From the IMG/VR virus record IMGVR_UViG_3300017528_000567, positions 1 through 64,000 of that record: a stretch of DNA of 64,000 nucleotides; one strand, given 5' to 3'. The position numbers were made by a program, and so were the translations under genes. Every line of letters begins with the position of its first letter. Positions within the stretch are counted from its first letter, which is position 1. This document shows, one piece after another, positions 6,140-33,237 of the stretch. The notes beneath the pieces are model-generated. The model saw nothing but the letters and a program-made list of their open reading frames with translations. It had not been told where the DNA came from and did not search any database.

Positions 6140-6586
6140 GTGAGCAAGAGCTTGAAGAATCTCAGGGGGCTTCTGCCAGGTGGCTATGTTCGGGGAGAGA
6201 GGCTTAGCCTGGACCGTCTTGGCGACGCCCTGGCCGACGCAATCAACAGGATTGATCGGAGAGCCCGCTGTGTGGCTGAAGACGCCGGCCTGCCGGACCC
6301 CGCGCCGCGCTTCGGGCAAATCCTAGCCGACCTGCATGCGCTCTTGACTGGCGGTACGACCGGGGCGCGCAAGGCGGAAGTAGCAGCCGATCTCCTACAT
6401 GGAGAAGTTACGGGGACCACCCTAACCATCGGCAGCGTCACGCATGACATTGACTGGGTCGTGATGCGTGAAGTGACTGACCCGACAATCATCGTCGAGG
6501 ACGGCACGGTCATCTACCTGCGGAGCTGGGCCGACCACAGGGCCGCGCTGCTCAAGCTCGGCGCTGACCACGTCCCCGGGAGATAG
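6140..6586 (+). CDS. hypothetical protein
   Basis: 148-aa ORF; GTG start 9 nt after a class-I promoter motif. Confidence 0.7.
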   Translation: MSKSLKNLRGLLPGGYVRGERLSLDRLGDALADAINRIDRRARCVAEDAGLPDPAPRFGQILADLHALLTGGTTGARKAEVAADLLHGEVTGTTLTIGSVTHDIDWVVMREVTDPTIIVEDGTVIYLRSWADHRAALLKLGADHVPGR

Positions 6587-7654: not shown

Positions 7655-7675
7655 GGGTCTGGGCGATCCTTTCGA

Positions 7676-7701
7676 GAGGCTCGGACTTGTGCGCCGTGCC
7701 C
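7676..7701 (-). promoter_or_regulatory. conserved 5'-leader hairpin of an MRKIAN gene
   Basis: GGGCACGGC-GCACAA-GTCCGAGCCTC. Confidence 0.7.
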
Positions 7702-7768
7702 TTGTTACAGAGCTCGAACCACAAGTGCTTTACTGCGCAGAAACAACGACGCTAGCGTTGCCCCCAGC

Positions 7769-7775
7769 GGTGTAA
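7769..7775 (+). promoter_or_regulatory. class-II motif GGTGTAA
   Basis: 8 nt before ATG 7784. Confidence 0.7.
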
Positions 7776-7783
7776 CAACCCAC

Positions 7784-8260
7784 ATGGATGACATTCGGCC
7801 GCTCGGGTCCGTAGAAGTTAGATGCGCTTACCCAGGATGCAACTGGAGCTTCTGGGTAGATTGCCTGGACCCAAGGCTGCCCGTCGGGCCGTTTGATTGC
7901 GGGGCCGACCACCAAACGCAAGCGCGAGTCAACGCTGCCCTAGAGAAGCTAGACAATGCCGGCCTGGTCTATCAAACAGCCGCGGGACCTGGCTGTGGTT
8001 GCGGAGGGCCGACCCAAAAATCCGGGTGCGAGCCGCCTCCCGCGCAACCCCCTACGATGACGACCGGGTATCTGATGCTACGGCTGCGCGAACCGGACTT
8101 TGATGGGAGTCAAGAGATGTGGGCCGCGGGTCGATTTGCGTGGGCGACTTGGGCCTCTCTCGGCGATCTTGAGGCGCTTCCGTGCGACGCCGGGGCCTAT
8201 CATTGGATGCCCCTTGATGAGGCGAGTCGTAACCGCCCAGCGGGTTACACAGGCCCTTGA
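7784..8260 (+). CDS. Cys-rich hypothetical protein
   Basis: ATG 8 nt after GGTGTAA; CAYPGC, DC, CGCGG motifs. Confidence 0.7.
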   Translation: MDDIRPLGSVEVRCAYPGCNWSFWVDCLDPRLPVGPFDCGADHQTQARVNAALEKLDNAGLVYQTAAGPGCGCGGPTQKSGCEPPPAQPPTMTTGYLMLRLREPDFDGSQEMWAAGRFAWATWASLGDLEALPCDAGAYHWMPLDEASRNRPAGYTGP

Positions 8261-8293
8261 GCCAAGAAAGCTCTTATCTGCTGCGCTCTGTGA

Positions 8294-8316
8294 AGGCACG
8301 GCTGAGGTCCGGCCTC
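8294..8316 (+). promoter_or_regulatory. conserved 5'-leader hairpin of an MRKIAN gene
   Basis: AGGCACGGC-TGAG-GTCCGGCCTC. Confidence 0.7.
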
Positions 8317-8337
8317 AACCCAAGGGAGCCTTGACCG

Positions 8338-8883
8338 ATGCGTAAGATCGCCAACACCCACGAGCTACAGGACGAGCTGCGGAAGCTCATCGCTTACACA
8401 GGGAGCAATAGGCCCTCTAGAGAACGCATTGCTCTAGAACTGAAGACCCTTTCAACTCGGCTCGCTTCTAGTGGAGGCCCGCTCCTGGACGCCAAGGTCG
8501 AGTGGGCGGTGGAGCTCGGTGAGCTCATGAAAGCACGATTCAGCGGCGTCGGCGGCTGGCGAGACCACCACATCAACATCGACATGCACCGCACAAACTC
8601 TGGATGCACTGTCAATCTAGAGAGCCCCCTTGGATGGACTAGCAACATCTATATCGAGATGGGCGAAGGCGAGCAGGCAGTCCATGTCTATTTCAATGTG
8701 TCAGAGCCCAAGGATACGCCCACGGGTGCAGACGGATTGCCCGACCTCGACGCCATTGACCTGACCGACCTGATCGGGAAACAGAAACGCGAAAGCTTCC
8801 CTATCAAGGACCGCGAGCCTATGGCCAAGGCGATGATGGCCGTGTCACTGTGGATCTCGAAGCAGATTCAAAGCGGCCGTTGA
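8338..8883 (+). CDS. MRKIAN-module protein 2
   Basis: MRKIANTHELQDELRKLIAYTGSNRPSRERIALELKTLSTRLA. Confidence 0.85.
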   Translation: MRKIANTHELQDELRKLIAYTGSNRPSRERIALELKTLSTRLASSGGPLLDAKVEWAVELGELMKARFSGVGGWRDHHINIDMHRTNSGCTVNLESPLGWTSNIYIEMGEGEQAVHVYFNVSEPKDTPTGADGLPDLDAIDLTDLIGKQKRESFPIKDREPMAKAMMAVSLWISKQIQSGR

Positions 8884-8905
8884 CGTCGCTCTGCAGCGCG
8901 ACGCT

Positions 8906-8940
8906 AACCGGATAGGCAGGGAATGGACCCTGCTTATCCG
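8906..8940 (+). repeat. AATGGA-loop palindrome, copy 2
   Basis: AACCGGATAGGCAGGG-AATGGA-CCCTGCTTATCCG. Confidence 0.9.
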
Positions 8941-8946
8941 TCTGTA

Positions 8947-9294
8947 TCAGTTGCCTGTGTCTGCTGTGATCAACCAGATCAATTTTCCGAAGACATCGTC
9001 CAGTTCGGTGACAACAGTTGCGAATTTCCGCACGGCAATTTTTGTGTCAGCGCTGAGTCCGCGACTCCCCATCAGTCCGCGGGCGACCTTCTTCACTTGT
9101 TCTATTGGCCCTTCAATACTGGCGACCAAGCGTCCCTCGTCAGTCAGCTCAGCCGTATGCTCGCCGGCAACGCGGGCACGGAGAGACTCGAGCTCGCTGG
9201 CGAGCCGAGAACGGGATGGTTTATCGGTCTGAGCATAGGCAAGCAGGCGGCGCAGCTCGATCTCAAGTTCATCGGCATCGGCAATCTTACGCAT
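8947..9294 (-). CDS. MRKIAN-module protein 3
   Basis: MRKIADADELEIELRRLLAYAQTDKPSRSRLASELESLRARVA. Confidence 0.8.
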   Translation of the reverse strand: MRKIADADELEIELRRLLAYAQTDKPSRSRLASELESLRARVAGEHTAELTDEGRLVASIEGPIEQVKKVARGLMGSRGLSADTKIAVRKFATVVTELDDVFGKLIWLITADTGN

Positions 9295-9317
9295 TGGTCT
9301 GGCACCTTTCTAGAGTG

Positions 9318-9342
9318 GAGGCCGGACCTCAACGCCGTGCCT
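9318..9342 (-). promoter_or_regulatory. conserved 5'-leader hairpin of an MRKIAN gene
   Basis: AGGCACGGC-GTTGAG-GTCCGGCCTC. Confidence 0.7.
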
Positions 9343-9394
9343 TCAAAAGGCGCGCTCGATAAGTGGTTGCTCGACGGCCTGCCTATCCAAGATG

Positions 9395-9577
9395 TCATCG
9401 CTTGCGCTTCTTCGCTTGCGGCGTAGGCGCAAGCGACTCCATCCGTTCGGCACGCTCCACCAAAGCCTCTGCCACTGCGTCAGGTGGTAACCCGGTCAAT
9501 TCACCGAGCATCGCGAAATATGCCCCGTCAGGGAGGTCGTCGTCGACAATGAGTAGGGCCGTCGCGATGTCCATCAT
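9395..9577 (-). CDS. small hypothetical protein (DDDLPDGAYFAM)
   Basis: 60 aa; ATG 9 nt after GGTGTAG. Confidence 0.7.
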   Translation of the reverse strand: MMDIATALLIVDDDLPDGAYFAMLGELTGLPPDAVAEALVERAERMESLAPTPQAKKRKR

Positions 9578-9586
9578 GGGAAGGCT

Positions 9587-9593
9587 CTACACC
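9587..9593 (-). promoter_or_regulatory. class-II motif GGTGTAG
   Basis: 9 nt before ATG 9577. Confidence 0.7.
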
Positions 9594-9772
9594 GACACGC
9601 AGCCAGGCGTAAAGCCCAGGGGCTCAAGGTCAGCTGCCGATTCGCCACGTGGGCGCGACGCGGCTCATTCGCCGCGGGTTTTGGCCTCCTTTGCGAACGG
9701 CTTGAAGTTTCGCTCTGGCCAAGACGTATTTGCAGGAACCGCCTGATATCAGGAACGAGAGGGTCAGACGTC

Positions 9773-11311
9773 GTGACCAAGAAGAAGCCGCCGAACCCCA
9801 ACCCGCAAAAGGCAGAGCTAGACGGATTGGTTTTCATCCTCCGAAATGGGAGATACGAGGTGGAGTTGCCCCACCCGTTCCGACCAGGTAGACATTGGCA
9901 CACCCAGAAGTTCGAGACTCGAGCCAGCGATTTGCAGGAAGCCCGGCGTATCGCTGGTGTCCGTTGCCAAGCTGACGTCGAGCTCGCCGCGCTCGTCGAT
10001 GATGAGGAGGCCAGCCGCCGTCTGGAAGTGCGGGACAAGGTAATCGGCGCCCTGCTCCGCCATTCCTACGGGAGCCTGCCAGCAGTCGAATCTATTCGTT
10101 CTAAAGTGGTCGAGAAGTGGCTGCGGACCATCGAGTCGTTTTCGATCGACCCCTTCACGGCAGTCCAGACCGTTCCGATCGTATTCCCGCCAGATGTGCC
10201 AGGCTCGTGGAAGCCGCCACGTCCGCTCGCATACTGGATGTCCCGCAAGGGTGCCCAAAGCATGCAAGCGCAGGAGACGTACCTCCACACTCAGCGGAGG
10301 ACGACATACAGCAGCGACGTGTTGGACTTCAGTAGCGTGTTGGCCACGTGCGATGAGGAAACCGGCTGGGGTTACGGTGCGAAACTCAAGGGCGTGTCGG
10401 AGACGGTCCATCTACTGGCCCGAGCCCGCAAGAGTCGTGAACTACTAGCGCGCGTCTTCCTACGTGCCTCCCTCCACAACACGATCGTGCGCTTTCGCCT
10501 CTCTGAGGATCCAAACGCCCCCCAACGTCGTCTAGACAACCGGCGGTATCCTGAGACTCCCTACCATGTCGAGTCGGACGACGGTGAGCTTGTCCTGGCC
10601 CTCGCCGGCCTTTGTGGCGAAGACCCGTGGCATCATGCGAGCAAGCAAACATTGCCCGACGTGATGGTTTCGCACGGCGAAAACTACCTTACCAGTTTCC
10701 GGTCCAACGATCATCGCCTTGACAACAGCCGGCAGCGCGAGATTACGGTCCGCAGCCTCAGCGAGCTGGTTGAACTGCTCGCAGTTGAGCACGCCCGGGT
10801 GATTGCCCAGCACGTTGTGGTCCTCTTCGTGGACGAGCAGAACCCAGACCCAGACCTGGAACTCTCCCCATACGGACACGAGGAAAGGCGGCCAGTCCTC
10901 CCGCCTCGTGAACCGCCTTCACGGGATGAGCGCCTACTAGAGATCAAGGCAGACCTGTTCGACGAGCTGAAGAAGTCACCCGCCCTGCAGGCGCAAGCTC
11001 GGAAGCGGATGAAGGATCGCCCCAAGCCGCAACCGCCGAAAGCTGACCCGACGCCCCCAGCCGAGCCGCCCAGCGGTAGCCCTCAAGAGGATCACGAGCT
11101 CCGTGCGGTCGATGCGACCGCGCAAGCAGTCACCGCCTCGGTTGAACCCCCTGCCGAGCTCAAAGCCACCCCGGCCTCAGTTCAAGCGCCCCGTCAGCCG
11201 CGTCGCCACGCTTCGGTCGAGAAGGTGCAGCCCATGGCCAAGACGTACAGCTATCTCGAGAAGCTCAAGGCCCGGAAGCGCAAGCGAACTAACCCACAGG
11301 AGACGACATGA
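9773..11311 (+). CDS. large hypothetical protein, possible N-terminal Arm/AP2-like DNA-binding fold
   Basis: 512 aa; GTG start with GAGAGGG upstream; Pro/Lys-rich C-terminal tail. Confidence 0.75.
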   Translation: MTKKKPPNPNPQKAELDGLVFILRNGRYEVELPHPFRPGRHWHTQKFETRASDLQEARRIAGVRCQADVELAALVDDEEASRRLEVRDKVIGALLRHSYGSLPAVESIRSKVVEKWLRTIESFSIDPFTAVQTVPIVFPPDVPGSWKPPRPLAYWMSRKGAQSMQAQETYLHTQRRTTYSSDVLDFSSVLATCDEETGWGYGAKLKGVSETVHLLARARKSRELLARVFLRASLHNTIVRFRLSEDPNAPQRRLDNRRYPETPYHVESDDGELVLALAGLCGEDPWHHASKQTLPDVMVSHGENYLTSFRSNDHRLDNSRQREITVRSLSELVELLAVEHARVIAQHVVVLFVDEQNPDPDLELSPYGHEERRPVLPPREPPSRDERLLEIKADLFDELKKSPALQAQARKRMKDRPKPQPPKADPTPPAEPPSGSPQEDHELRAVDATAQAVTASVEPPAELKATPASVQAPRQPRRHASVEKVQPMAKTYSYLEKLKARKRKRTNPQETT

Positions 11312-11386
11312 GTCACCCCGGAGCTCGCATGAGGGGGTGCCCCTCTTGGGATCATCTCGTGTTTCCCTAGACATGCAATTGGCAGG

Positions 11387-11448
11387 TAACCGGATAGGCA
11401 TGGAATGGACCTTGCCTATCCGGTTAGCACCCCCTGAAAGTCTGGAAA
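11387..11448 (+). repeat. AATGGA-loop palindrome, copy 3, plus left inverted-repeat arm
   Basis: TAACCGGATAGGCATGG-AATGGA-CCTTGCCTATCCGGTTA-GCACCCCCTGAAAGTCTGGAAA. Confidence 0.9.
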
Positions 11449-11554
11449 GTCTGTACGGGCGCGACGTGGCCTTGGCTGTGCACGCGGAGTCGCCTACCTA
11501 CGATGAGCTGTACAGCGGGAGTTGGGTGCATGCCGCGTAGTGCCCCCAGATTAG

Positions 11555-11589
11555 CTTGAAGTTTCGGGCCGCTCGTTTGTATCTACGGC
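11555..11589 (+). promoter_or_regulatory. class-I promoter-like motif
   Basis: CTTGAAG-N13-GTTTGT-N9-ATG. Confidence 0.75.
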
Positions 11590-13200
11590 ATGGGCAAGCG
11601 AAAGTATAGGACACGGGAAGAGTGGCATGCGGACTTGCGGCAGGTGTGCGCCAGCAAGAACTGGGAGATAGTTGGCAATCTCCCGGACGCGGCGAAGCAA
11701 AAGTTGACCCTGCGCTGCAAAAACCACGAGAAAGGTGTCGATGCGCCGGAGGGCTACTACGAATGGCATCCGGTGCCGGGGGATATCTTTCAGGGTAAAG
11801 GGTGCCGCCTCTGTTCTGGTGTCGCTCCATTGACGAACGCCCAAGTCGCGTTCTCGGCTAGCCAGGTAGGATTGACACTGTTTCCCCAGTCTCAGCGAGT
11901 GACGAACAATAGGGCTTCCCTCCAGTTTCAGTGCAATGAGTGCAGCGACGTTCGACGGTATATCGTATGTAACGTTCGTAACGGGCAAGGCTGCAAACCG
12001 TGCGCTGATAAGAGGAACGGTCTGTCCCGTCGAATCCCAAGAGCTACGATAGTTGCCCGGCTTGCTGTTCACCGACTCAAGTTCGTCAGCGTGGCGCATC
12101 CCGATGGTGATGATGCGCACGTCACCTATACATGTCGGTTCGGCCACATTCATACACAGGTGCTGCACACACTAAAGAAGAGCAAAGGGTGCGCGATTTG
12201 TAGCGTCTTGCCGCGCCGCGAGACGGTACTGAGACAGATTCTCGAATACCTCACGGGGTTCAAGTGGCCGAAGCAGAGAGTCGCCTGGTTGCTAAGCCCG
12301 AAGCGCCGCAAGCTAGAGCTTGACGGCTACTGTAAGGAGGTTGGGTGCGCTTTCGAGCACCAAGGGGAACAACACTACAAATTTGTGGCTCTCTGGAGCA
12401 AATGCCAAAACTACGACCAGTTGAAAGTCGCGGGCTGTCGCGCCGAGGGGGTCAAACTCCTAGTTACTGATGAGAAAGGCTACGATAAAGCCGAGAAGAT
12501 GGGCGGGACGGCGGGCCTCGTGCGTTGGGTAGCTCGGCTACTTGCGGATTTGAACGTACCGATGCGACCAAACCCAGGCCAGTTTAGACTCGAATTCAAC
12601 AGTACAACGGCGGAAGCGCGCACGAGAGAATGTCATGAGTTTGCCAAAGCCAATGACGGCAAGTTCTTGGACCCGGTATGCATCGCAGCCTTAGCAATGA
12701 ATCGCTGGCTCTGTGCGACTCACGGGAAGTTCGAGAGAAGCTTGACCGACATGAAGACAAACAAGAGCTGGTGCCCGAAATGCGGCCGTGAGCTATCTGG
12801 TGAAGCTAGACGCAAACCATTTGTGACACTCTCCGGCTTTCGTAAAGAGTGCAGGCGCATAGGCGTTCGGAGCAGAGACACGTATACGCAGGCTAAGAAG
12901 TCTGGGGCGTTCCAGGTCTTGGCACCGGTAGACGTGATAGATTACTACAAGCTCCCACTGAGCAAGCTATTCCAAAAATCCAGCATGCATGGCGACCCTT
13001 GGCAGTACACGGATGAGCACGACGATCCCGCCGACCTGAAGGACCACCCGAATGCGAAGATTCGGCGCCTCTCGTCGGGGAGGCTCCGTCGTGCCGTGGC
13101 CCTGCCCAAGAAGCAGCCCAAGGTCCCTGCCAACGACAACGTTGATGCACTGGCCGACCGCTTGAACGCTATCTACAGCGGGCGCGAGATCCCCGACTGA
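11590..13200 (+). CDS. multi-zinc-ribbon PD-(D/E)XK/Vsr-like endonuclease (putative homing-type), copy 1
   Basis: Multiple CxxC pairs; LELDGYCKEVGCAFEHQGEQHY nuclease-like motif. Confidence 0.75.
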   Translation: MGKRKYRTREEWHADLRQVCASKNWEIVGNLPDAAKQKLTLRCKNHEKGVDAPEGYYEWHPVPGDIFQGKGCRLCSGVAPLTNAQVAFSASQVGLTLFPQSQRVTNNRASLQFQCNECSDVRRYIVCNVRNGQGCKPCADKRNGLSRRIPRATIVARLAVHRLKFVSVAHPDGDDAHVTYTCRFGHIHTQVLHTLKKSKGCAICSVLPRRETVLRQILEYLTGFKWPKQRVAWLLSPKRRKLELDGYCKEVGCAFEHQGEQHYKFVALWSKCQNYDQLKVAGCRAEGVKLLVTDEKGYDKAEKMGGTAGLVRWVARLLADLNVPMRPNPGQFRLEFNSTTAEARTRECHEFAKANDGKFLDPVCIAALAMNRWLCATHGKFERSLTDMKTNKSWCPKCGRELSGEARRKPFVTLSGFRKECRRIGVRSRDTYTQAKKSGAFQVLAPVDVIDYYKLPLSKLFQKSSMHGDPWQYTDEHDDPADLKDHPNAKIRRLSSGRLRRAVALPKKQPKVPANDNVDALADRLNAIYSGREIPD

Positions 13201-13212
13201 GGCAGCGTATCC

Positions 13213-13247
13213 CTTGAAGTTTGGCCCCCGCCGATTGTCTTTACGGT
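13213..13247 (+). promoter_or_regulatory. class-I promoter-like motif
   Basis: CTTGAAG-N13-GATTGT-N9-ATG. Confidence 0.8.
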
Positions 13248-13451
13248 ATGACCCAAGTAGCCCTCAAGACGACGCCCACCCTGGAGTTTGTGCTCAAGGT
13301 CGACGGCGAGTACGCCATCGGGATCGAGGCGGCAAGCATCGAGGACGCTCAAGCCTTGGCACTGGCCGATGAGTGGCTGGAGCAGCGCTCTGCGCGCCTC
13401 GTAGAGGTCGGCAACGACAACAACCAGCTCGACTTCGTGGTGGGGCGATGA
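13248..13451 (+). CDS. small hypothetical protein
   Basis: 67 aa; ATG 9 nt after a class-I promoter; ATGA overlap with the next gene. Confidence 0.7.
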   Translation: MTQVALKTTPTLEFVLKVDGEYAIGIEAASIEDAQALALADEWLEQRSARLVEVGNDNNQLDFVVGR

Positions 13452-15013
13452 GTCACGGAAGGACAATCGAAGAATGGCAAGAGGATGTGCGGAAGATCCT
13501 CAAGAAGAACAACTGCAAGCTAGTCAGCGCGCTGCCATCCAGAATCGATCACGAATTGACGGCGCGTTGCTGCAACCACGAGGAAGGGCCGGACGCGCCA
13601 CTCGGTTATTACGAGTGGCCCACGACGCCAGCCCGGCTGTTCAAGGGCAAAGGCTGTCCGCTCTGCAGTAAACGTGCGCCACTGACGCGGGCACGAATAC
13701 TGGCGTCGGCTAGTCAGGTACACTTGACTCTAGATCCCGTGTCCCAGGATATTCCCGACGGTATCTCCAACACGAACTACCTCGACTTCAGGTGTGACAA
13801 CTGCGGCGTGACTAAACCGCACAGAATAGGAAATATCCGCACCGGCCACGGCTGCAAGAACTGCGCATCCGTTACCATTGGCGAGGCCCGTCGAATCACA
13901 GATGAAGAACTGATTGATTGGCTTGCGTGCGACGACCTCACGCTGATAAGCCGGGAATTTCGCAAGGGGATCGCCTATGTCAAGTTCGGCTGCCGACGCG
14001 GGCACACGCCTACGCAGCCCTGGGGTGTCGTGAGCCGCGGCAATGGCTGCCCGGATTGCGCGATGATGCCGCACGGTGAGACGGTGACGCGACAGCTCTT
14101 CGAGTACCTCACCGGCTTCACGTGGACGAAGGACAGGGTCAGTTGGATGCGGAGCGACTTGGGCAATCCGCTAGAGCTTGACGGATACAATGAGGAGCGT
14201 CGGTGCGGTTTCGAGTTCCAAGGGGAGCAGCATGATGTAGACAACGGCTATTTCCCACGCGCCAAGTACGACCACCTAAAGGTCGAGGGGTGCCGCAAGC
14301 AAGGCGTCACGCTAGTCATCGTGCTCAAGAAAGACTATGACGCGGCGAAGAAGAGTGGTGGCCAAGAAGGGTTATTGCTGTGGGCAATCGGCCTACTCAA
14401 GGCGGCTGGCATACCAATGCTGGCAAACCCAGGCCGGCTGGTGCTCAAACTCAATACGCCCCGAAGTGACGCACTGACCATCGAAGCCAATGCGCTCGCC
14501 GAAGCCAAGGGCGGTGAGTTCGTGGATGATGTCTGCACCGAGGCTGAAGCCGAGCACAACTGGCGCTGCAAGGATCACGGGACGTTCAAGAGAAGCCTGA
14601 GTGTGATGAAGCAACGGGAGTTCTTCTGTCCGTACTGCGGTGGAGAGCAACGCGCTGAAAACCGACGGTTGGAGTATGCGACCATCTCCGTGATCCGCAG
14701 GGAATTTCGCCGGCTAGGTCTTCAGAATGAACGTGAAGTTGCGAAGGCTCGGGACGCAGGAGATTTCGGTGAGATTGTGGTGCCATCGGCCTTGCAGATC
14801 TACCTCGACCTTACGCCCAACCAGGTGTTCCAAAAAACCACCAAGCTGGGCGAGCCCTGGCAATATATCGACGAGCACGATAACCCCGCCGATCTCGCAC
14901 TCCACCCGAGGCGTTACAGCACCCCGATCCACTTGGGGAAGGGCCGAGAAGCCAAGAAGCCGAACAAGCGGTCGCCGGGCGCGGTCTCAAGGCCTGAGCC
15001 GACGGTAGGCTAG
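13448..15013 (+). CDS. multi-zinc-ribbon PD-(D/E)XK/Vsr-like endonuclease, copy 2
   Basis: Colinear paralogue of 11590..13200; LELDGYNEERRCGFEFQGEQHD. Confidence 0.75.
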   Translation: MSHGRTIEEWQEDVRKILKKNNCKLVSALPSRIDHELTARCCNHEEGPDAPLGYYEWPTTPARLFKGKGCPLCSKRAPLTRARILASASQVHLTLDPVSQDIPDGISNTNYLDFRCDNCGVTKPHRIGNIRTGHGCKNCASVTIGEARRITDEELIDWLACDDLTLISREFRKGIAYVKFGCRRGHTPTQPWGVVSRGNGCPDCAMMPHGETVTRQLFEYLTGFTWTKDRVSWMRSDLGNPLELDGYNEERRCGFEFQGEQHDVDNGYFPRAKYDHLKVEGCRKQGVTLVIVLKKDYDAAKKSGGQEGLLLWAIGLLKAAGIPMLANPGRLVLKLNTPRSDALTIEANALAEAKGGEFVDDVCTEAEAEHNWRCKDHGTFKRSLSVMKQREFFCPYCGGEQRAENRRLEYATISVIRREFRRLGLQNEREVAKARDAGDFGEIVVPSALQIYLDLTPNQVFQKTTKLGEPWQYIDEHDNPADLALHPRRYSTPIHLGKGREAKKPNKRSPGAVSRPEPTVG

Positions 15014-15052
15014 TAGGCGGGGCGTATCGATGCGCTAAAGTCTCGGCTAATT

Positions 15053-15059
15053 GGTGTAC
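15053..15059 (+). promoter_or_regulatory. class-II motif GGTGTAC
   Basis: 9 nt before ATG 15069. Confidence 0.65.
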
Positions 15060-15068
15060 TTACTAGGC

Positions 15069-15296
15069 ATGCAATTGACCGAACCAGAGACCGAAATTCT
15101 GCAGGCGTTCGCTGGGAAACCGTACGCTATCGCAGGCTTCCCCGAGGATTGTAAGGGTCCTATCGATGGCCTGATGGCCTACGGCTTGATCACCTGGAGT
15201 GGTCTCCAGAGACCGATCCCAGGCCAGGACGAGTCTTGGTGGCGTGTTCGCCTGACAGACCAGGGGCGTCGCTACGTTTTGGACGCGGGTTGGTAA
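15069..15296 (+). CDS. small hypothetical protein (winged-helix-like)
   Basis: 75 aa; LTEPETEIL...LMAYGLI...VRLTDQGR; ATG 9 nt after GGTGTAC. Confidence 0.65.
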   Translation: MQLTEPETEILQAFAGKPYAIAGFPEDCKGPIDGLMAYGLITWSGLQRPIPGQDESWWRVRLTDQGRRYVLDAGW

Positions 15297-15312
15297 GCGA
15301 GTAGAGGCAATT

Positions 15313-15355
15313 GGAAAAAGGCGGGGCGTGCGGTGTCGCCGTCCCGCCTTTTTCC
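15313..15355. terminator. intrinsic terminator (bidirectional-looking)
   Basis: GGAAAAAGGCGGG / CCCGCCTTTTTCC 13-bp stem with A/T tracts at both ends. Confidence 0.8.
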
Positions 15356-15413
15356 ATACTTTCAGGGGGTGCAAACCGGATAGGCATGGAATGGACCATG
15401 CCTATCACGCCGG
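15351..15413 (+). repeat. right inverted-repeat arm plus AATGGA-loop palindrome, copy 4
   Basis: TTTCCATACTTTCAGGGGGTGC-A-AACCGGATAGGCATGG-AATGGA-CCATGCCTATC. Confidence 0.9.
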
Positions 15414-15447
15414 ATACCGCAGAGCTCGCTCAAGGGGTCTGGCCGCT

Positions 15448-15454
15448 GGTGTAT
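15448..15454 (+). promoter_or_regulatory. class-II motif GGTGTAT
   Basis: 8 nt before ATG 15463. Confidence 0.7.
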
Positions 15455-15462
15455 GATCCGGC

Positions 15463-16116
15463 ATGCTCTACACCCAATTAGAAACCGACTTGGCCTTGGG
15501 GACGTTGGACGGAATCGTACGCCCAGAATCCCTAGAAAACGTACGTCAACACTACGAGGGGGATGGTCGCTATTATCACGACTTCGATCACGCGGTCGAG
15601 GTCGTGAGCTGGATCAACCGGGCTTGTGAGGACTATACAGAAGAAGCCCTCCACCCGTTCACGCATCAAGAGCTCCGCCTCGCGGCGCTCTTCCATGATG
15701 TGGTCTACACAGCCGCGGGGAGCCCTAGCAACGAACAGCAGAGCTGCGAGCTCATGCGCAACGAGTTGAAGGGGGTAGTTTCCGAGGATTCGTTGGCCCA
15801 GATTGGCCAGCTCATCATGCTCACCGCGCAGCACGGCAAACTTGGCGCCGGTGACGCGCCACTGGCAGGCTGCGTCCTTCTCGACGCCGACATCGCGAGC
15901 CTTGGGCAATATCACTGGGAAACGGTCGTGTACAACAACATGAATGTGGTCGCCGAGCTGCGTCTCAAGTACACGCCCGAGCAAGTGGCGCTGGGACGCA
16001 AAGCTTTCCTTGGTGGCTTGCTAGCAAAAAAGTCGATCTTCCTGTCGGAGTTCTTCCGAACCAGGCTCGAAGATCAGGCCCGCAGAAACATCACGAAGAT
16101 CTTGGCGAGCTCGTAG
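15463..16116 (+). CDS. HD-superfamily metal-dependent phosphohydrolase (COG4339-like)
   Basis: RYYHDFDH...ALFHDVVY...NEQQS...LLDADIASLG. Confidence 0.85.
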   Translation: MLYTQLETDLALGTLDGIVRPESLENVRQHYEGDGRYYHDFDHAVEVVSWINRACEDYTEEALHPFTHQELRLAALFHDVVYTAAGSPSNEQQSCELMRNELKGVVSEDSLAQIGQLIMLTAQHGKLGAGDAPLAGCVLLDADIASLGQYHWETVVYNNMNVVAELRLKYTPEQVALGRKAFLGGLLAKKSIFLSEFFRTRLEDQARRNITKILASS

Positions 16117-16126
16117 CCGACCCCAT

Positions 16127-16133
16127 GGTGTAG
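16127..16133 (+). promoter_or_regulatory. class-II motif GGTGTAG
   Basis: 8 nt before GTG 16142. Confidence 0.7.
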
Positions 16134-16141
16134 CCCCGTGA

Positions 16142-17239
16142 GTGAATTTCGATTGGAATCAATACACGGGGCAACTCAAGTGGCTCCCGGAGCGGACCAT
16201 CTATCTGACGCGGCACGGGTCGCACGCTTACGGCACCTCTTTGCCAACAAGCGACCTGGACCTCCGGGGGATCACCGTCGCTCCGATTCACTATTACCTC
16301 GGGATCAGCGAGACGTTCGAGCAGGCGGTACAAAACGAGCCGGTAGACCTCACTATTTTCGACCTACGAAAGTTCGTCAAGCTCGCGGCCGACGCCAATC
16401 CCAACGCCCTCGAGATCCTTTTCACCGACCCGAGCGACCATCTCGTGGTGCACCCGGTGATGCAGGTTCTGCTCGAAAATCGCGATGCGTTCCTTAGCCA
16501 GAAAGCCAAGCACACCTTCAGCGGTTACGCGAGGGCGCAGCTGCGCCGGATACAAGGCCACCACAGATGGCTGAAGTCCCCGCCAAAGGCGGCGCCAACG
16601 CGGCAGGAGTTTGGGCTCCCTGAACGCACCGTGATCCCCGCCGATCAACTCGCGGCAGCTCAAGCCGCTGTTACCAAGCAAGTCGATCAGTGGAGCTGGC
16701 ATGAGATGGAGCACCTGGACCCCGCCACACGGCAGGCGGTCCAGGACGAGTTCTTGCGCCGCCTTACCGAGATCACCCAGTGGAGCTGGGATCAAGTGGA
16801 CGCCAAGGTTTGGCTAGCCGCGAGTCGCGCGATCGGGCTCGATGATAATTTCATCCGGCTGCTAGACCTCGAGCGCCAGTACACAGGCCGTCTGAAGGAG
16901 TGGCAGCAGTACCAGGACTGGAAAAAGAACCGGAACCCGGCCCGCGCCGCCCTCGAAGAGAAGTACGGGTACGACTCGAAACACGCCATGCATCTGGTTC
17001 GGCTAACCAAGATGTGCCGGGAGCTCTTGACCGAAGGAGTGGTCCGGGTGCGTCGCCCCGATGCCGGGGAGCTACTCGAGATTCGCAATGGCGGTTGGAC
17101 ATACGAGCAACTACTGGAATACTCCGACCTCCAGGACGCCGCGCTCGGCGAGCTCGTGAAGGCTTCCACGCTCCCCAAGCAGCCTGACCGAAAGAAGCTC
17201 GACGAACTGTGCCTGACCATCATAGAGCGAATGGGGTAG
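16142..17239 (+). CDS. Pol-beta superfamily nucleotidyltransferase (RlaP/Nuc-transf-like)
   Basis: HGSHAYGTSLPTSDLDLRGI (GS..DxD); ANPNALEILF; GYDSKHAMHLVRL. Confidence 0.85.
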   Translation: MNFDWNQYTGQLKWLPERTIYLTRHGSHAYGTSLPTSDLDLRGITVAPIHYYLGISETFEQAVQNEPVDLTIFDLRKFVKLAADANPNALEILFTDPSDHLVVHPVMQVLLENRDAFLSQKAKHTFSGYARAQLRRIQGHHRWLKSPPKAAPTRQEFGLPERTVIPADQLAAAQAAVTKQVDQWSWHEMEHLDPATRQAVQDEFLRRLTEITQWSWDQVDAKVWLAASRAIGLDDNFIRLLDLERQYTGRLKEWQQYQDWKKNRNPARAALEEKYGYDSKHAMHLVRLTKMCRELLTEGVVRVRRPDAGELLEIRNGGWTYEQLLEYSDLQDAALGELVKASTLPKQPDRKKLDELCLTIIERMG

Positions 17240-17291
17240 ACGAGCCCAGAGAAACAGCGATCGCAACGCTGATCTCTGGGCTGGCCGATCC

Positions 17292-17639
17292 CTAATACCA
17301 GATCTCGAGAACCTTGTGCATGGCGGCCCCATCGCAGCCGTCTGTGCACTGAGAGTCGTAGGGTATGAGAGCCCTAGCTTCTAAGAGGCTTGTCGCGGCG
17401 AGGCGTGGAAAGATGGCCTTACGGATTTTCCCGCGGGGTGACACTTGCCAGTGCCGGACCAAGTACATCCCGGGGCACTCCTTGGTTGAGTCGGTGTGGA
17501 TGACCCAGATGTTGTGGTTGCCCGCCTGGTCACGCCGCTCGAGCCAGCGTCGAGGGATTCGGCCGCCCAAAGGTCCGCCAAGAGCTCGGACCCATTGCGG
17601 CCGATATGGACGAACATTAAACCCCTGTCGCGGCTTCAT
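17292..17639 (-). CDS. hypothetical protein
   Basis: IWVIHTD...PGMYLVRHW...TSLLEARALIP...VLEIWY looks like a real small phage protein; start uncertain. Confidence 0.55.
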   Translation of the reverse strand: MKPRQGFNVRPYRPQWVRALGGPLGGRIPRRWLERRDQAGNHNIWVIHTDSTKECPGMYLVRHWQVSPRGKIRKAIFPRLAATSLLEARALIPYDSQCTDGCDGAAMHKVLEIWY

Positions 17640-18585
17640 ACTTGCTGACTTTGCTTTGAAAAAGTGAGTACGGATCGCTAGCCCCAAGTGCTGGATCGAA
17701 ACGCACGGAAAACCCAGCAGCCTTGGTATGACCTCCTCCACCCATGCTCTTACAGAAGGCCGCGCAGTCGAACGCGGAGTGGTTGGATCTGAGAGAGTAC
17801 CCAAGGGGGGCTTGTCCATCCACTATGGCAAAATAATCAAACCCTACAACGAGATCGGCTCCATCCTTCACTACTTCACAGGCATCGCTAGTAAGTTTCG
17901 TCCCCTGGAACATGACTACCCGTTTTCCGCCGGGGCTCGTGAAGTGGTAGGCGCCATCGAGAGCCTTGAGAATGGTCCCATGGTGCTGTTCTACCAGCCG
18001 CTGGCCCACCGACCGCCGAGCATCCCACCAAGGTTTGCGAGCCGCTGAGAACGGGGCGTAAACTAACCAGCTCTCCTGTGAGAAGAACCGGATACCTTCC
18101 GCTAGCTCGCATGCTTTGGGCCAGTCCGGGTCGTGCTTCTGCCAGGTGTCTCGAATCCCACTCAACCGGGCAATCTCTGCAGCGAACCGGACTTCATCGT
18201 CATGCGTGGATTTTAGATTCGTCATTGGAAGCCAGACGTGGCGGAAAGCCAGAACCGCTCCGCACACCCCTGGTTCAGTCACTTCATCCCCGAACACACC
18301 ACGCTCTCCGAATGCCTCAACAATGGGCTTAGCGCTCTTATGGTGGTCGAGGATGATGGCCCCCGCATCCACGAACTCCTGATAGCGCGATTCATGCGGA
18401 GAGAAGTCACAGAACAGCGTGTTCGGTTTGACCTCAAGTTTCTCTTGAGCAGCTCCGTACTGGCAAAACTGTATATTCGCGAGCGGTAATGCATCGTGCA
18501 GCAGCATCGCCGAGACAGTGCCGTCAGCACAGTTGTCGTGACATACGATATCAGTGACTTGAGTCAGGGCATCTAGATCTAACAC
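17617..18585 (-). CDS. DHH/DHHA1 phosphoesterase (NrnB-like oligoribonuclease)
   Basis: HDNCADG, FCDFS, ILDHHKS, GGGGHTKAAGF; GTG start after AAAGGAGG. Confidence 0.85.
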   Translation of the reverse strand: MLDLDALTQVTDIVCHDNCADGTVSAMLLHDALPLANIQFCQYGAAQEKLEVKPNTLFCDFSPHESRYQEFVDAGAIILDHHKSAKPIVEAFGERGVFGDEVTEPGVCGAVLAFRHVWLPMTNLKSTHDDEVRFAAEIARLSGIRDTWQKHDPDWPKACELAEGIRFFSQESWLVYAPFSAARKPWWDARRSVGQRLVEQHHGTILKALDGAYHFTSPGGKRVVMFQGTKLTSDACEVVKDGADLVVGFDYFAIVDGQAPLGYSLRSNHSAFDCAAFCKSMGGGGHTKAAGFSVRFDPALGASDPYSLFQSKVSKYEAATGV

Positions 18586-18617
18586 GTAGAGGCCTCCTTT
18601 CGGAGCCCCTACACCGA

Positions 18618-31677: not shown

Positions 31678-33228
31678 TCACGTGACTGAGAATTTGCGAT
31701 CATTGCCACTGGGGTCTGCTGCGAAGCGAGCTCTAATGCCGTCATCTATCTCGGGGTCGAAGCCGATCCAGTCGAGCGTCTCGTTGATCTCCGTAACCAT
31801 GGTCTTCACAATGCGCGGCTTACGGCCGAGCTCCCTAAGCAAGATGCCTTCATCCAAGCCGCGCTTCCTAGCGTCAAAGCTCGCCGTCAAAGCTGACTTG
31901 ATGGCTTGCTCGATCTCTCGACCGACCATCAGCTTGGCTTTGTCCGCCAGTGCCGCGAGGTCGAACCCCCTCGTATCTTGGCCCCGCTTAGCGAGATGAA
32001 TCTTGAGAATATCGACGCGGTCCTCGCACGATGGGAGGTCAAAAAACCACCTGTCATCGGTGCGGTTCACAAATTCAACCGGCAAGGTCTTGAGCGAGTT
32101 GGCAGTCATCGCCAAGCACACGGGAGCCTTGGTCTCCTGCAACCATGTCGACAGGATACCAATCGATCGACTCGTAGTGCCAGCGTCGGTCTGCGAAGAA
32201 GAGTGACTGCCGGCGAAACTCTTCTCGGCTTCATCCACCCAGACGATGCAAGGGGCCATAGACTCAATGATGCGAAGCGCACGATACATGTTGGCTTCCG
32301 AGCCCCCGACTTCGGCGGTCCGTAGCTTCCCCATCTCGAGCTGAATCACAGGCAGCCCCCACGCGTTGCCCAACGCCTTTATGCTCAGAGACTTGCCAGT
32401 GCCCCAGACACCAACGGCCAGAACACCCTTGGGCGGCTCAAGTCCAAAGGCTTGCCCTTCTGGGGTCCAGGTCGCTTTCGCCATCTGCACCCACTTCTTG
32501 AAGCGGGAGACTCCCCCTACTTGCTCGAACGAGTACTTGGAGGTGTCGACGTAGTGAACCAGGTCAGTCTTGCGCAGCTGCCGAAACTTGTACCGTGCGA
32601 GCTCGTCCCGGTCCCTGAGCGAGTCACGCTTGTATCCTTGGATGAGCGCTGACTGCACCTCGAAGGATGTCAGGCCTCGAAATATCCCCTCGGGATTCTC
32701 TGGCAACGGCACCTCGAGCTCGCCGCACGTATCGGAGACGACCTTGAGGATCTCATCTGCCGTGAGCCCCGTGTCATGCACCACTTCTGTGTACCGCTGT
32801 AGCTTCTCCGGGATGTAGCGGCGGCTACCAACACAAATGATGATCTTCGCCGTGCCGCTGTCGTTGTGCACTTGGTGCAAGATGTTCAGAAGCCGACGCT
32901 GCACGTGCTGATCCTGTAGCCAGCGCTCTGGGTCGGTGATCACGTAGTACTTGCGCTGTGGGCTCGCCTCGTCCTTGTAGATTGCAGTCAGCGCGTCCTG
33001 GATGTTGATGGTGTCCTTGTCGATCTTGTGTTCCTTGCGCTTCCAATCGTCGATCAGATCGAGCAGCGGGATGAGACCGAAAGCAGCGTTGTAGACGCGG
33101 ACATTAGCGACCTTGTTGTCTCGACGCAGCCCTTCCTTGAGTTGATTGAGAAACCTGTCCTCTTCATCGGTGACGACGTAAATCAACCGTGTGATGCAGT
33201 GGAGATAGAAGCTGAACTCCGGGAGCAT
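31678..33228 (-). CDS. Ycf46-type AAA+ ATPase
   Basis: Degenerate N-terminal AAA domain, then GVWGTGKS (Walker A), IVWVDEAEK (Walker B), VGGSEAN, TAN; ATG 9 nt after GGTGTAA. Confidence 0.9.
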   Translation of the reverse strand: MLPEFSFYLHCITRLIYVVTDEEDRFLNQLKEGLRRDNKVANVRVYNAAFGLIPLLDLIDDWKRKEHKIDKDTINIQDALTAIYKDEASPQRKYYVITDPERWLQDQHVQRRLLNILHQVHNDSGTAKIIICVGSRRYIPEKLQRYTEVVHDTGLTADEILKVVSDTCGELEVPLPENPEGIFRGLTSFEVQSALIQGYKRDSLRDRDELARYKFRQLRKTDLVHYVDTSKYSFEQVGGVSRFKKWVQMAKATWTPEGQAFGLEPPKGVLAVGVWGTGKSLSIKALGNAWGLPVIQLEMGKLRTAEVGGSEANMYRALRIIESMAPCIVWVDEAEKSFAGSHSSSQTDAGTTSRSIGILSTWLQETKAPVCLAMTANSLKTLPVEFVNRTDDRWFFDLPSCEDRVDILKIHLAKRGQDTRGFDLAALADKAKLMVGREIEQAIKSALTASFDARKRGLDEGILLRELGRKPRIVKTMVTEINETLDWIGFDPEIDDGIRARFAADPSGNDRKFSVT

Positions 33229-33237
33229 GCCGGCCAA

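What the first reader, a model, noticed from the sequence alone, without database searches (positions are those of the whole stretch)
11387..15413. Transposase-free ~4-kb nuclease cassette bounded by 36-bp inverted repeats and a duplicated palindrome
Seen: the reverse complement of 11413-11448 (TTTCCAGACTTTCAGGGGGTGC-T-AACCGGATAGGCA) matches 15351-15386 (TTTCCATACTTTCAGGGGGTGC-A-AACCGGATAGGCA) at 34/36. The outer 33 bp is also a direct repeat (11388-11420 vs 15374-15406, 32/33) and is itself a hairpin. The left end has a tandem GAAAGTCTG x2 sub-repeat like a protein-binding site array. Inside are two paralogous Zn-ribbon PD-(D/E)XK nucleases and two small ORFs, with their own promoter motifs and a terminator, but no recognisable DDE, Tyr or Ser recombinase. 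Known: terminal inverted repeats plus a duplicated target define transposon-like elements, and some (Tn7 TnsA) use PD-(D/E)XK nucleases. Inference: this may be an undescribed nuclease-driven mobile or invertible cassette that targets the phage's own hairpin repeat.
Basis: partly seen in the sequence, partly recalled or inferred. Interest (0 to 1): 0.85.

Follow-up and report, generated by a model that had tools for sequence, protein, structure and literature searches.

The report
Hairpin-bounded swappable gene cassette in jumbo phage
The flagged "inverted repeats" are the two halves of a palindromic junction element that separates interchangeable gene cassettes in a variable spot of a giant phage genome; this cassette carries two homing-type endonuclease genes, so it looks like known phage cassette shuffling and not like a new transposon.

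Summary
The repeats are real and far above chance. They are not transposon ends. Each arm is half of a long palindrome: a 16-bp core arm, about 22 bp of extension and the loop AATGGA. Copies of this palindrome sit at every cassette boundary in one hypervariable locus.

A phage 97.6-99.1% identical over about 42 kb of aligned flanks has three of these hairpins and two unrelated small genes where the window has 9572-15373. A third allele, from the same ENA sample that also holds the window allele, has yet other genes next to the same right-hand hairpin. In all three alleles homology resumes at window 15374.

Hairpin arms travel with their flanks, and one hairpin is chimeric, which puts the crossovers at the palindrome centre. 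The flank pattern is A|core|B' - cassette - B|core|C. That is what docking of a circular cassette carrying one full palindrome into a core-only site would give.

The cargo is two paralogous endonucleases (42% identical) with treble-clef zinc fingers and a Vsr-like (EDxHD-type) nuclease domain, a likely winged-helix protein, one orphan ORF, phage-type promoters and a terminator. I found no recombinase in the 64-kb window.

The closest known systems are PeSL-mediated modular shuffling in T4-type phages and free-standing homing endonuclease genes. I rate it a new variant of a known kind, of moderate interest.

The parts
8906..8940 (+). W1: solitary copy of the hairpin core (13-bp stem, loop AATGGA) with no extended arms, lying between convergent genes. 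Candidate unoccupied docking site.
9572..11378 (+). Variable segment holding the 512-aa ORF (9773..11311). Absent from the relative. It abuts the left edge of W2.
11379..11426 (+). W2: backbone-type left flank 'A' (ATTGGCAGGT, shared with Rb of the relative) plus the hairpin core (17-bp stem with one T.T mismatch, loop AATGGA).
   Evidence: (I3, D6)
11427..11454 (+). Includes the 9-bp tandem GAAAGTCTG x2.
11555..11592 (+). Promoter-family motif whose 3' end is the ATG of nuclease 1. The same family is at 2927 and 13213.
   Evidence: (D5)
11590..13200 (+). Nuclease 1 (536 aa): treble-clef zinc fingers plus a Vsr-like/EDxHD nuclease domain.
13213..13250 (+). Second copy of the promoter-family motif, ending at the ATG of the 67-aa ORF.
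   Evidence: (D5)
13248..13451 (+). 67-aa ORF of unknown function. Its stop overlaps the start of nuclease 2 (ATGA).
13448..15013 (+). Nuclease 2 (521 aa), paralogue of nuclease 1 at 42% identity. Family-invariant residues E211, D245, E256, H262, D275. Domain model pLDDT 88.9 with an alpha-beta-beta-beta-alpha-beta-alpha core.
15069..15296 (+). 75-aa ORF. Predicted fold resembles PadR/MarR winged-helix DNA-binding proteins (a lead only).
15312..15356 (+). Intrinsic-terminator-like hairpin (17-bp G+C-rich stem) with an A-run before and a T-run after. It closes the cassette.
   Evidence: (I5)
15351..15373 (+). Cassette-side extended arm B, the reverse complement of 11427-11448 at 21/22.
15374..15406 (+). 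W3: hairpin core (11-bp perfect stem, loop AATGGA) followed by backbone-type right flank 'C' (ACGCCGGA). Homology to both other alleles resumes exactly here.
15407..15465 (+). Spacer and promoter of the conserved HD-phosphohydrolase gene. There are 10 differences from the relative across 15374-15443 and then about 1.5% divergence, so the region is a fine-scale mosaic across alleles.

Best explanation
Window 8.9-15.5 kb is a hypervariable ('hyperplastic') early-region locus of a jumbo phage. Gene cassettes there are separated by copies of one palindromic junction element: a 16-bp core arm, the loop AATGGA, a 16-bp core arm, and on any side that faces a cassette about 22 bp of further palindromic extension.

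The nuclease block (11427-15373) is one such cassette. Its '36-bp inverted repeats' are the two halves of its own palindrome. Joined together they form a stem of about 36-37 bp.

Cassettes are gained, lost and replaced by recombination whose crossover falls at or near the centre of the palindrome. Shown: three alleles differ exactly there, and arms co-vary with their flanks. Inferred: the layout is what results when a circular cassette carrying one full palindrome (B|core|B') recombines with a core-only backbone site (A|core|C). The window has one such cassette and the relative has two. Because the junction is a palindrome, cassettes can sit in either orientation, as they do: plus-strand genes here, minus-strand genes in the relative.

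The recombination is most likely ordinary phage homologous recombination on the 33-80-bp repeats, as proposed for PeSLs. Breaks at the palindrome or breaks made by the cargo endonucleases may stimulate it. This step is inferred, not shown.

The cargo is two free-standing homing-type (Vsr-like/EDxHD) endonuclease paralogues with a small winged-helix protein and an orphan ORF. They are expressed from the phage's own promoter type and closed by a terminator.
For: 1; the relative contig matches window 951-9571 (98.3%) and 15374-26113 (99.1%). Window 9572-15373 is replaced there by 1265 bp; window 24523-47459 is colinear at 97.6%. This locus is therefore the only large difference in the stretch compared, window 951-47459.
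2; the replacement holds three hairpins (Rb, Rc, Rd) that delimit two unrelated minus-strand ORFs.
3. Rc is the complete palindrome with arms of about 26 bp.
4; flank types follow A|core|B' ... B|core|B' ... B|core|C in the relative and A|core|B' ... B|core|C in the window. All halves that face a cassette are of the B type (...CAGGGGGwrs), whatever the cargo.
5; third allele L031 has 583 bp of unrelated DNA, then a B-type arm, the core and the C flank. Homology to the window again starts at 15374 (98.7%).
   - Its left arm plus extension is an exact 24/24 reverse complement of Rc's right arm plus extension.
   - Its hairpin is chimeric, with two mismatches.
6; the window allele and the third allele occur in the same ENA sample.
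7; joining the two cassette ends gives a 97-nt hairpin of -66.8 kcal/mol.
8; the cassette uses the same promoter family as other genes of this phage.
9; its G+C content is not anomalous.
10. Nuclease identity:
   - the nucleases belong to a very large family whose phage members are annotated as homing endonucleases.
   - one member lies inside an intron of the Staphylococcus phage Machias nvRNAP beta gene.
   - one member is free-standing in Xanthomonas phage OP1.
   - they have a Vsr-like core and invariant E, D, H and D residues.
Against: - Only three alleles from one narrow phage lineage are available.
- No empty orthologous site, circular junction or inverted allele was found.
- The left limit of the replaced segment (9572) is not at a hairpin.
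- On the right, the sharp drop in divergence comes about 70 bp past the start of the hairpin, at 15444. Part of the exchange could therefore be ordinary mosaic recombination in flanking homology.
- More distant relatives have a variable HD/NTase neighbourhood and the same promoter family but no hairpin family. The hairpin is thus not needed for plasticity in this lineage.
- The hairpin's own molecular function (terminator, operator, RNA processing or break site) is untested. It has no U-tract.
Confidence: 0.6

Rival explanations
1. Homing is the driver. The two endonucleases cut endonuclease-less alleles at or near this locus, perhaps at the pseudo-palindromic hairpin or in the HD promoter region. 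Double-strand-break repair then copies the cassette, with co-conversion of flanks. The hairpins would be incidental regulatory elements. This overlaps with the best explanation, because both could act together.
For: - The family is annotated as homing endonucleases in phages, and some members are intron-borne.
- Invariant E, D, H and D residues are in the order and roughly the spacing of I-Bth0305I (PMC3239194).
- The cassette is present or absent between near-identical phages.
- Elevated divergence next to the cassette (15374-15443) resembles a co-conversion tract. Free-standing HEGs are known to cut at a distance and drag flanking DNA along (PMC2988022).
Against: - Cassettes without any nuclease (two in the relative, one in L031) have the same hairpin boundaries and B-type arms. 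Nuclease action therefore cannot explain the junction architecture.
- No cleavage site is known, and no activity has been tested.
Confidence: 0.2
2. An integron-like site-specific system. The palindromes would be attC-like sites folded as hairpins and recombined by a dedicated recombinase encoded elsewhere in the 255-434-kb genome.
For: - The array logic with distinct backbone and cassette half-sites.
- Crossovers at the element centre.
- Imperfect palindromes.
- Loop orientation is the same in all seven distinct copies, regardless of gene orientation.
Against: - No integrase, transposase or resolvase domain in the cassette, in the JGI Pfam calls for window 337-25013, or in the other large ORFs of the window.
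- The arms lack the GTTRRRY/RYYYAAC core sites (read).
- The cassettes carry their own promoters, can be multigenic and lie on both strands.
Confidence: 0.08
3. The hairpins are purely regulatory or structural: bidirectional insulators or terminators, an operator for a dimeric regulator such as the 75-aa winged-helix protein, or RNase III-type processing sites. That includes a possible 22-bp 5'/3' long-range duplex bracketing the cassette transcript. Their coincidence with mosaic boundaries would be secondary.
For: - Intergenic position.
- Invariant loop and half-sites.
- G.T pairs tolerated on the plus strand.
- One G-C to T-A double change (W3).
- Stable folds with z-scores from -2.4 to -7.6.
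Against: - Arms vary independently of their partners: T.T in W2, two mismatches in L031, A.C in Rc. That is not the pattern of a structure under strong pairing selection.
- No U-tract, and a separate canonical terminator sits immediately upstream of W3.
- No Rfam match.
- All copies lie in one 7-kb variable locus, with none elsewhere in the window and no other match to the two core patterns in the 255-kb contig.
Confidence: 0.09
4. One reading: a transposase-free transposon with terminal inverted repeats and a duplicated hairpin target, moved by its PD-(D/E)XK nucleases as with TnsA.
For: A 34/36 inverted repeat and a 32/33 direct repeat bound the block, and nuclease genes lie inside.
Against: - The 'TIRs' are shared with unrelated cassettes and are halves of a junction palindrome.
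- There is no second copy of the cassette anywhere.
- No empty site with a single hairpin was found.
- The nucleases belong to a homing-endonuclease-type family, not TnsA, and there is no TnsB-like partner.
Confidence: 0.03

Closest known systems
PeSL (promoter-early stem-loop) mobile regulatory cassettes of T4-type phages (Arbiol et al. 2010, PMC2839356; Comeau et al. 2014, PMC4122927)
   Same: - Repeated intergenic motifs containing a stable stem-loop, concentrated in a hyperplastic region.
- Insertions, deletions and replacements between near-identical phages are bounded by the motif.
- The proposed mechanism is recombination between neighbouring copies, which can release or dock a circular cassette carrying one chimeric copy.
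- The cargo is mostly orphan genes with their own expression signals.
   Different: - Here the repeat is a long, near-perfect palindrome of up to 36 bp per arm, without an embedded sigma-70 promoter. The promoter family is a separate motif 20-170 bp away.
- Backbone-side and cassette-side halves are distinguishable.
- Cassettes occur in both orientations.
- Only about 4 copies per genome, all at one locus, against about 50 in phi1 and RB49.
- Terminator activity and mini-circles are not shown.
Free-standing homing endonuclease genes of phages (T4 seg/mob genes; PMC2988022)
   Same: - Endonuclease genes with their own signals inserted between conserved genes.
- Present or absent among close relatives.
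- Flanking co-conversion-like divergence.
   Different: - Two tandem paralogues plus two accessory ORFs travel as one block.
- The block boundaries are shared with non-endonuclease cassettes.
- The nuclease family differs from GIY-YIG and HNH.
EDxHD / Vsr-like homing endonucleases, prototype I-Bth0305I (PMC3239194; PDB 3r3p)
   Same: - Predicted alpha-beta-beta-beta-alpha-beta core. The best PDB neighbours include 3r3p, Vsr (1vsr), NGO0050 (3hrl) and RAP domains.
- Invariant E, D, H and D residues, with the same D-to-H spacing of 17.
- Homologues in phage introns.
   Different: - DNA-binding modules are multiple treble-clef zinc fingers (DUF4379-like) on both sides of the nuclease domain, not NUMOD/HTH.
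- An extra invariant Glu (E256).
- Foldseek E-values are weak (0.4-0.5), and no sequence-level PDB hit was found.
Integron gene cassettes and attC sites
   Same: - An array of cassettes separated by imperfect palindromes.
- Cassette number and content vary between strains.
- A distinct 'platform' half-site at the array edge.
   Different: - No IntI.
- No R'/R'' core-site consensus.
- Cassettes have promoters, may hold several genes and lie in both orientations.
- The crossover is at the palindrome centre, not in an R' box.
REP/BIME, Correia and other miniature palindromic intergenic repeats
   Same: Short palindromic intergenic repeats that can stabilise mRNA and act as recombination sites.
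   Different: - Those are dispersed genome-wide in tens to hundreds of copies, and some are linked to RAYT or other transposases.
- Here all copies are confined to one cassette locus and half-elements sort by backbone versus cassette side.

Membership tests
Transposon with terminal inverted repeats and target-site duplication | Inverted repeats are specific to the ends of the element | tested here: not met
   The same B/B' arms flank two unrelated cassettes in the relative and one in L031. Rc carries both arms as one palindrome.
Transposon with terminal inverted repeats and target-site duplication | The direct repeat is a duplication of a single-copy target (an empty site exists) | tested here: not met
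   The 33-bp unit is a repeat family with further copies at 8906 and in every junction of the relative. No orthologous single-hairpin empty site was found in the viral, metagenome or genome collections.
Transposon with terminal inverted repeats and target-site duplication | Encoded or partner transposase (DDE, Tyr, Ser, HUH; TnsB for TnsA) | tested here: not met
   None in the cassette or among the window ORFs scanned, which cover most but not all ORFs of at least 100 aa. The rest of the 255-kb genome could not be scanned.
PeSL-type mobile regulatory cassettes | Repeated intergenic motif with a stable stem-loop, concentrated in a hyperplastic region | tested here: met
   Three or four copies, all within 6.6-15.4 kb. 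This is the only large structural difference between the two phages in the stretch compared, window 951-47459.
PeSL-type mobile regulatory cassettes | The motif is a composite of a sigma-70-like early promoter and the stem-loop | tested here: not met
   The hairpin contains no promoter. The repeated promoter motif (2927, 11555, 13213 and others) is separate and at a variable distance.
PeSL-type mobile regulatory cassettes | Indels and replacements between close relatives are bounded by the motif | tested here: met
   Right boundary at 15374 in two independent comparisons. Internal cassette boundaries fall at the ends of the extended arms. The left outer boundary (9572) is not at a hairpin.
PeSL-type mobile regulatory cassettes | Stem-loop terminates transcription; mini-circles form | not testable with these tools
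   Needs reporter assays, Term-seq and outward-facing PCR. No circular-junction contig was found.
Integron cassette array | IntI tyrosine recombinase with attI and Pc next to the array | tested here: not met
   No recombinase domain in window 337-25013 (JGI Pfam calls) or in the other window ORFs scanned.
Integron cassette array | attC with R''-L''/L'-R' core sites (RYYYAAC / GTTRRRY) | tested here: not met
   The arm ends read GTTAGCA, GTTCCTT and GTTGCTT, and GGTAAC on the left. No consistent match (alignment A2).
EDxHD / Vsr-like homing endonucleases | Vsr-like nuclease fold | tested here: inconclusive
   The domain model (pLDDT 88.9) has the alpha-beta-beta-beta-alpha-beta-alpha core. Top PDB neighbours are Vsr-like (3r3p prob 0.51, 1vsr 0.57, 3hrl, RAP domains), but all have E > 0.1. 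DUF2726 hits in 2 of 25 homologues.
EDxHD / Vsr-like homing endonucleases | Conserved E, D, H, D catalytic residues | tested here: met
   E211, D245, H262 and D275 are invariant in 25 diverse homologues, and both paralogues keep them. The D-to-H spacing of 17 matches D196/H213 of I-Bth0305I (PMC3239194).
EDxHD / Vsr-like homing endonucleases | Site-specific cleavage of the endonuclease-less allele, and homing | not testable with these tools
   Only context is available: presence/absence polymorphism and homologues in an intron or free-standing.
IS200/IS605-type or REP/RAYT hairpin elements | Y1 HUH transposase recognising subterminal hairpins | tested here: not met
   No such domain in the cassette or the window. 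The hairpins lack the REP GTAG head.

The most novel reading that the evidence does not exclude
The palindrome is a dedicated, orientation-free docking site of a phage cassette-exchange system that works without a classical integrase. It would be extruded as a cruciform or hairpin and cut or resolved at its centre by a structure- or sequence-specific nuclease, possibly the Vsr-like enzymes carried by this very cassette. Circular cassettes carrying one full palindrome could then dock into core-only sites such as the one at 8906. That would be an integron-like gene-capture device native to jumbo phages.
Probability: 0.12. Interest if true: 0.8.

Novelty: new variant of a known kind. Interest (0 to 1): 0.45.

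Why it matters
Jumbo-phage genomes are full of orphan genes, and how they turn over is poorly documented. This locus gives a clean natural example. Three alleles, two of them co-existing in one sample, swap unrelated cassettes at a defined palindromic junction. The half-sites record which side is backbone and which is cargo.

This extends the PeSL idea beyond T4-type phages to a different kind of junction: a pure palindrome that works in either orientation. It also gives an easily testable site for studying cassette exchange, homing-endonuclease spread and accessory-gene flux in large phages. It corrects a tempting but wrong 'new transposon' reading as well.

Tried and rejected
- **megablast of 9 kb against cultured phages:** no match.
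- **Core-pattern scans:** in IMG/VR, JGI metagenomes and GTDB genomes I found only the two related contigs, one identical fragment and three matches in unrelated bacterial MAGs that I take to be chance. There was no empty site, no circular junction and no further alleles.
- **Third-allele search:** a 29-mer of the third allele against IMG/VR gave nothing.
- **Exact-protein look-ups:** the 115-aa, 74-aa and 77-aa ORFs are not on record. Nuclease 1 occurs only in the source contig.
- **L033:** it first looked like a large-deletion allele because the gene lengths coincide. It is the relative's allele at 100% identity.
- **Whole-protein fold search of nuclease 2:** uninformative because the model is multidomain (pTM 0.43). 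I refolded the nuclease domain alone.
- **PDB sequence searches:** no meaningful hits.
- **Rfam:** no family in 6000-17500.
- **PADLOC and NCBIfam:** nothing for any cassette protein.
- **Generic promoter/terminator scan:** at background level.
- **Distant relatives:** no repeated palindrome family near the DNA polymerase or near HD/NTase.
- **N4-type hairpin promoters:** considered from memory and dropped. The stem is far longer, the loop is 6 nt, and copies sit between convergent and minus-strand genes.
- **CRISPR-like array:** dropped because the spacings are 0.6-4 kb of coding DNA.
- **Composition:** the cassette's G+C is like its surroundings, so there is no sign of recent foreign origin.


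Full report
**Source and setting**

The window is positions 1-64000 of IMG/VR contig IMGVR_UViG_3300017528_000567 (255,478 bp). That contig is the last 255 kb of a 433,843-bp JGI contig. PHROG and Pfam hits identify phage-type replication genes: a family-A DNA polymerase, a DnaB-like helicase, an SNF2-type helicase, primase zinc fingers and AAA ATPases. There are also many very large orphan proteins. DNA-polymerase relatives at 52-64% identity lie on contigs of 93-416 kb, plus one 6-kb fragment. I therefore treat this as a jumbo phage. Nothing similar exists among cultured phages at the DNA level.

- The reverse complement of 11413-11448 matches 15351-15386 at 34/36.
- 11388-11420 repeats directly at 15374-15406 at 32/33.
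- The left copy folds into a 17-bp stem with a 6-nt loop.
- GAAAGTCTG occurs twice in tandem at 11437-11454.
- Shuffled controls expect 0.49, 0.12 and 0.00 matches where 5, 2 and 3 are found.
- The right junction recurs at 100% identity in contigs from two other samples (L009; L010), so it is not an assembly artefact.

**What the repeats are**

The hairpin core has the form AACC.GATAGGCA.GG.ATGGACC.TGC.TATC. It occurs at 8906 (W1), 11388 (W2) and 15374 (W3), always on the plus strand, with a decayed copy at 6599. Core-pattern scans of IMG/VR found no other copy in the 255-kb contig.

A second contig, IMGVR_UViG_3300046461_000454, is 98.3% identical to window 951-9571, 99.1% identical to 15374-26113 and 97.6% identical to 24523-47459. 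Window 9572-15373 is replaced there by 1265 bp. That replacement contains three more hairpins (Rb, Rc, Rd) separating two unrelated minus-strand ORFs of 134 and 152 aa. Neither ORF has a family assignment.

Rc is a complete palindrome with arms of about 26 bp. Its right extension (GCTTCCCCTGAAAGTCTGG) is the same element as the window's left 'IR arm'. Its left extension, and that of Rd, correspond to the window's right 'IR arm'.

**Array logic**

Aligning all halves shows two classes.

- Halves that face a cassette are all of one type (B/B': ...CAGGGGG[A/T][A/G][G/C] next to the core).
- Halves that face the conserved backbone are different. The left flank is ATTGGCAG[G/C]T in W2 and Rb. The right flank is ACGCCGGA in W3, Rd and the third allele.

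The relative reads A|core|B' - ORF - B|core|B' - ORF - B|core|C. The window reads A|core|B' - nuclease cassette - B|core|C. This is the product expected if circular cassettes carrying one full palindrome (B|core|B') recombine, at the core, with a backbone site A|core|C. That step is an inference.

Joining the two ends of the nuclease cassette in silico gives a 97-nt hairpin of -66.8 kcal/mol. W1 has neither extension and may be an unoccupied site.

**A third allele and the crossover position**

An exact-protein look-up of the HD phosphohydrolase found ENA contig k141_804945 (L031). Its first 583 bp are unrelated to either phage and hold two small minus-strand ORFs. A B-type arm, the core and the C flank follow, and homology to the window resumes at 15374 (98.7% over 2.6 kb). 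Three observations follow.

- Its left arm plus extension is an exact 24/24 reverse complement of Rc's right arm plus extension. Half-elements are therefore interchangeable in either orientation.
- Its hairpin is chimeric, with two mismatches. The left arm carries the G/A variants seen on cassette sides, and the right arm carries the A variant of W3.
- Its spacer (window 15407-15443) matches the relative, while its HD protein is identical to the window's.

In the relative, CCAG left arms go with B flanks and GCTTATC right arms go with B' flanks. Arms therefore stay linked to their flanks and are reassorted at the loop. The same ENA sample also contains the window allele (L009), so the locus is polymorphic within one sample.

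**Caveats on the boundaries**

- The left limit of the replaced segment (9572, at the start codon of a minus-strand gene) is not at a hairpin. The 512-aa ORF lies between that point and W2.
- On the right there are 10 differences from the relative in 15374-15443 and then 4 in 257 bp. Some exchange has therefore also occurred in flanking homology.
- Relatives with 67-78% identical NTase have a variable HD/NTase neighbourhood and the same promoter family but no hairpins. The hairpin is a feature of this narrow lineage.

**Cargo**

- *Nucleases.* Nuclease 1 (11590..13200) and nuclease 2 (13448..15013) are 42% identical over 508 aa.
  - They hit phrog_559 and phrog_681 ('endonuclease'), and nuclease 2 hits DUF4379 weakly. 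Homologues carry several DUF4379 treble-clef fingers.
  - The family is very large: 39,945 representative clusters at E <= 0.001.
  - Phage homologues are annotated as homing endonucleases. One lies inside an intron of the nvRNAP beta gene of Staphylococcus phage Machias. One is free-standing among the tail genes of Xanthomonas phage OP1.
  - Across 25 diverse members E211, D245, E256, H262 and D275 are invariant.
  - The isolated domain folds with pLDDT 88.9 into an alpha-beta-beta-beta-alpha-beta-alpha core.
  - Its best PDB neighbours are I-Bth0305I (3r3p), Vsr (1vsr), NGO0050 (3hrl) and RAP domains, all at weak E-values.
  - This fits the Vsr-like 'EDxHD' homing-endonuclease lineage (PMC3239194), with zinc-finger DNA-binding modules in place of NUMOD.
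- *75-aa ORF.* Its predicted structure resembles PadR/MarR winged-helix proteins. This is a lead only.
- *67-aa ORF.* It has no assignment.
- *Expression signals.* A repeated promoter motif ends at the start codons at 11590 and 13248 and also occurs at 2927, so the cassette uses the phage's own signals. A strong hairpin with a T-run at 15312-15356 closes the cassette. Its G+C content is unremarkable.
- *Recombinase.* None is detectable in the cassette or among the window ORFs scanned.

**Mechanism**

Shown:
- The hairpins mark cassette junctions in three alleles.
- Cassette-side and backbone-side halves are distinct.
- Arms reassort at the centre.

Inferred:
- Cassettes move by recombination between copies of the palindrome, most simply homologous recombination as proposed for PeSLs of T4-type phages (PMC2839356, PMC4122927), possibly through circular intermediates.
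- The palindromic form lets cassettes sit in either orientation.
- Breaks at the palindrome, or breaks made by the cargo homing-type endonucleases (PMC2988022), may stimulate exchange.

Not supported:
- A transposon with its own terminal repeats and a target duplication.

I considered an integron-like site-specific system, a purely regulatory hairpin and pure homing as the driver. The rivals section weighs them.

**Verdict**

It is wrong in kind, because this is not a nuclease-driven transposon. The locus is a new variant of known phage modular shuffling and carries free-standing homing-type endonucleases. Interest is moderate.

Noticed in passing
window 2927-2964, 11555-11592, 13213-13250; looser at 9701, 15037, 15427; L025 8374 and 9313: A repeated promoter-like motif (CTTGAAGTTT...GATTGTCTT.A.GG.ATG) whose 3' end is the start codon, which suggests leaderless transcripts. 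The same family occurs in a relative with only 78% identical NTase.
   Followed up: partly
window 8338-9294: The solitary hairpin W1 lies between convergent genes 8338..8883 (+) and 8947..9294 (-). These share a 42-aa N-terminal domain at 52% identity, so the arrangement is an inverted gene pair centred on the palindrome.
   Followed up: partly
window 6599-6650: A decayed copy of the hairpin: the left arm matches 13/16 and the loop is expanded by an inner stem-loop. It lies just after ORF 6140..6586.
   Followed up: no
L032, L033, L037: Short-read assemblies from other samples break at or within about 30 bp of the hairpins: at window 15438 just past W3, inside Rb, and at W1. This is expected for a repeat of at least 33 bp and is a practical warning for assembling this locus.
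   Followed up: partly
window 1 = position 178,366 of JGI contig Ga0187305_1079523: The IMG/VR viral contig is the trimmed last 255 kb of a 433,843-bp contig. The upstream 178 kb was not examined, so the true genome size and the provirus-versus-phage status are open.
   Followed up: no
window 9399 (minus-strand gene 9395..9577) vs L002 8451..8654: An 18-bp in-frame indel in a Lys/Arg-rich C-terminal repeat (KRKRSK) separates the two phages.
   Followed up: no
window 11337-11540: JGI calls a 67-aa gene that runs straight through hairpin W2. It has no homologues and is probably spurious. A promoter-like CTAGACATGCAATTG just upstream resembles the start region of the 75-aa ORF (15063-15077).
   Followed up: no
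window 15463-17239; L025 6391-11095; L026 7267-11080: The HD phosphohydrolase and the RlaP-type nucleotidyltransferase are adjacent here. In more distant relatives 2-3 kb of other genes separate them, so the neighbourhood is plastic across the lineage.
   Followed up: partly
window 33251-33290: Another 17-bp-stem hairpin (loop GGGTCG), unrelated in sequence to the junction element. It lies just downstream of the minus-strand ORF 31678..33237.
   Followed up: no
L026 3043-3302: A Lys/Ala/Pro-rich tandem-repeat coding stretch (AKKAAPKKK-like) in a 416-kb relative.
   Followed up: no
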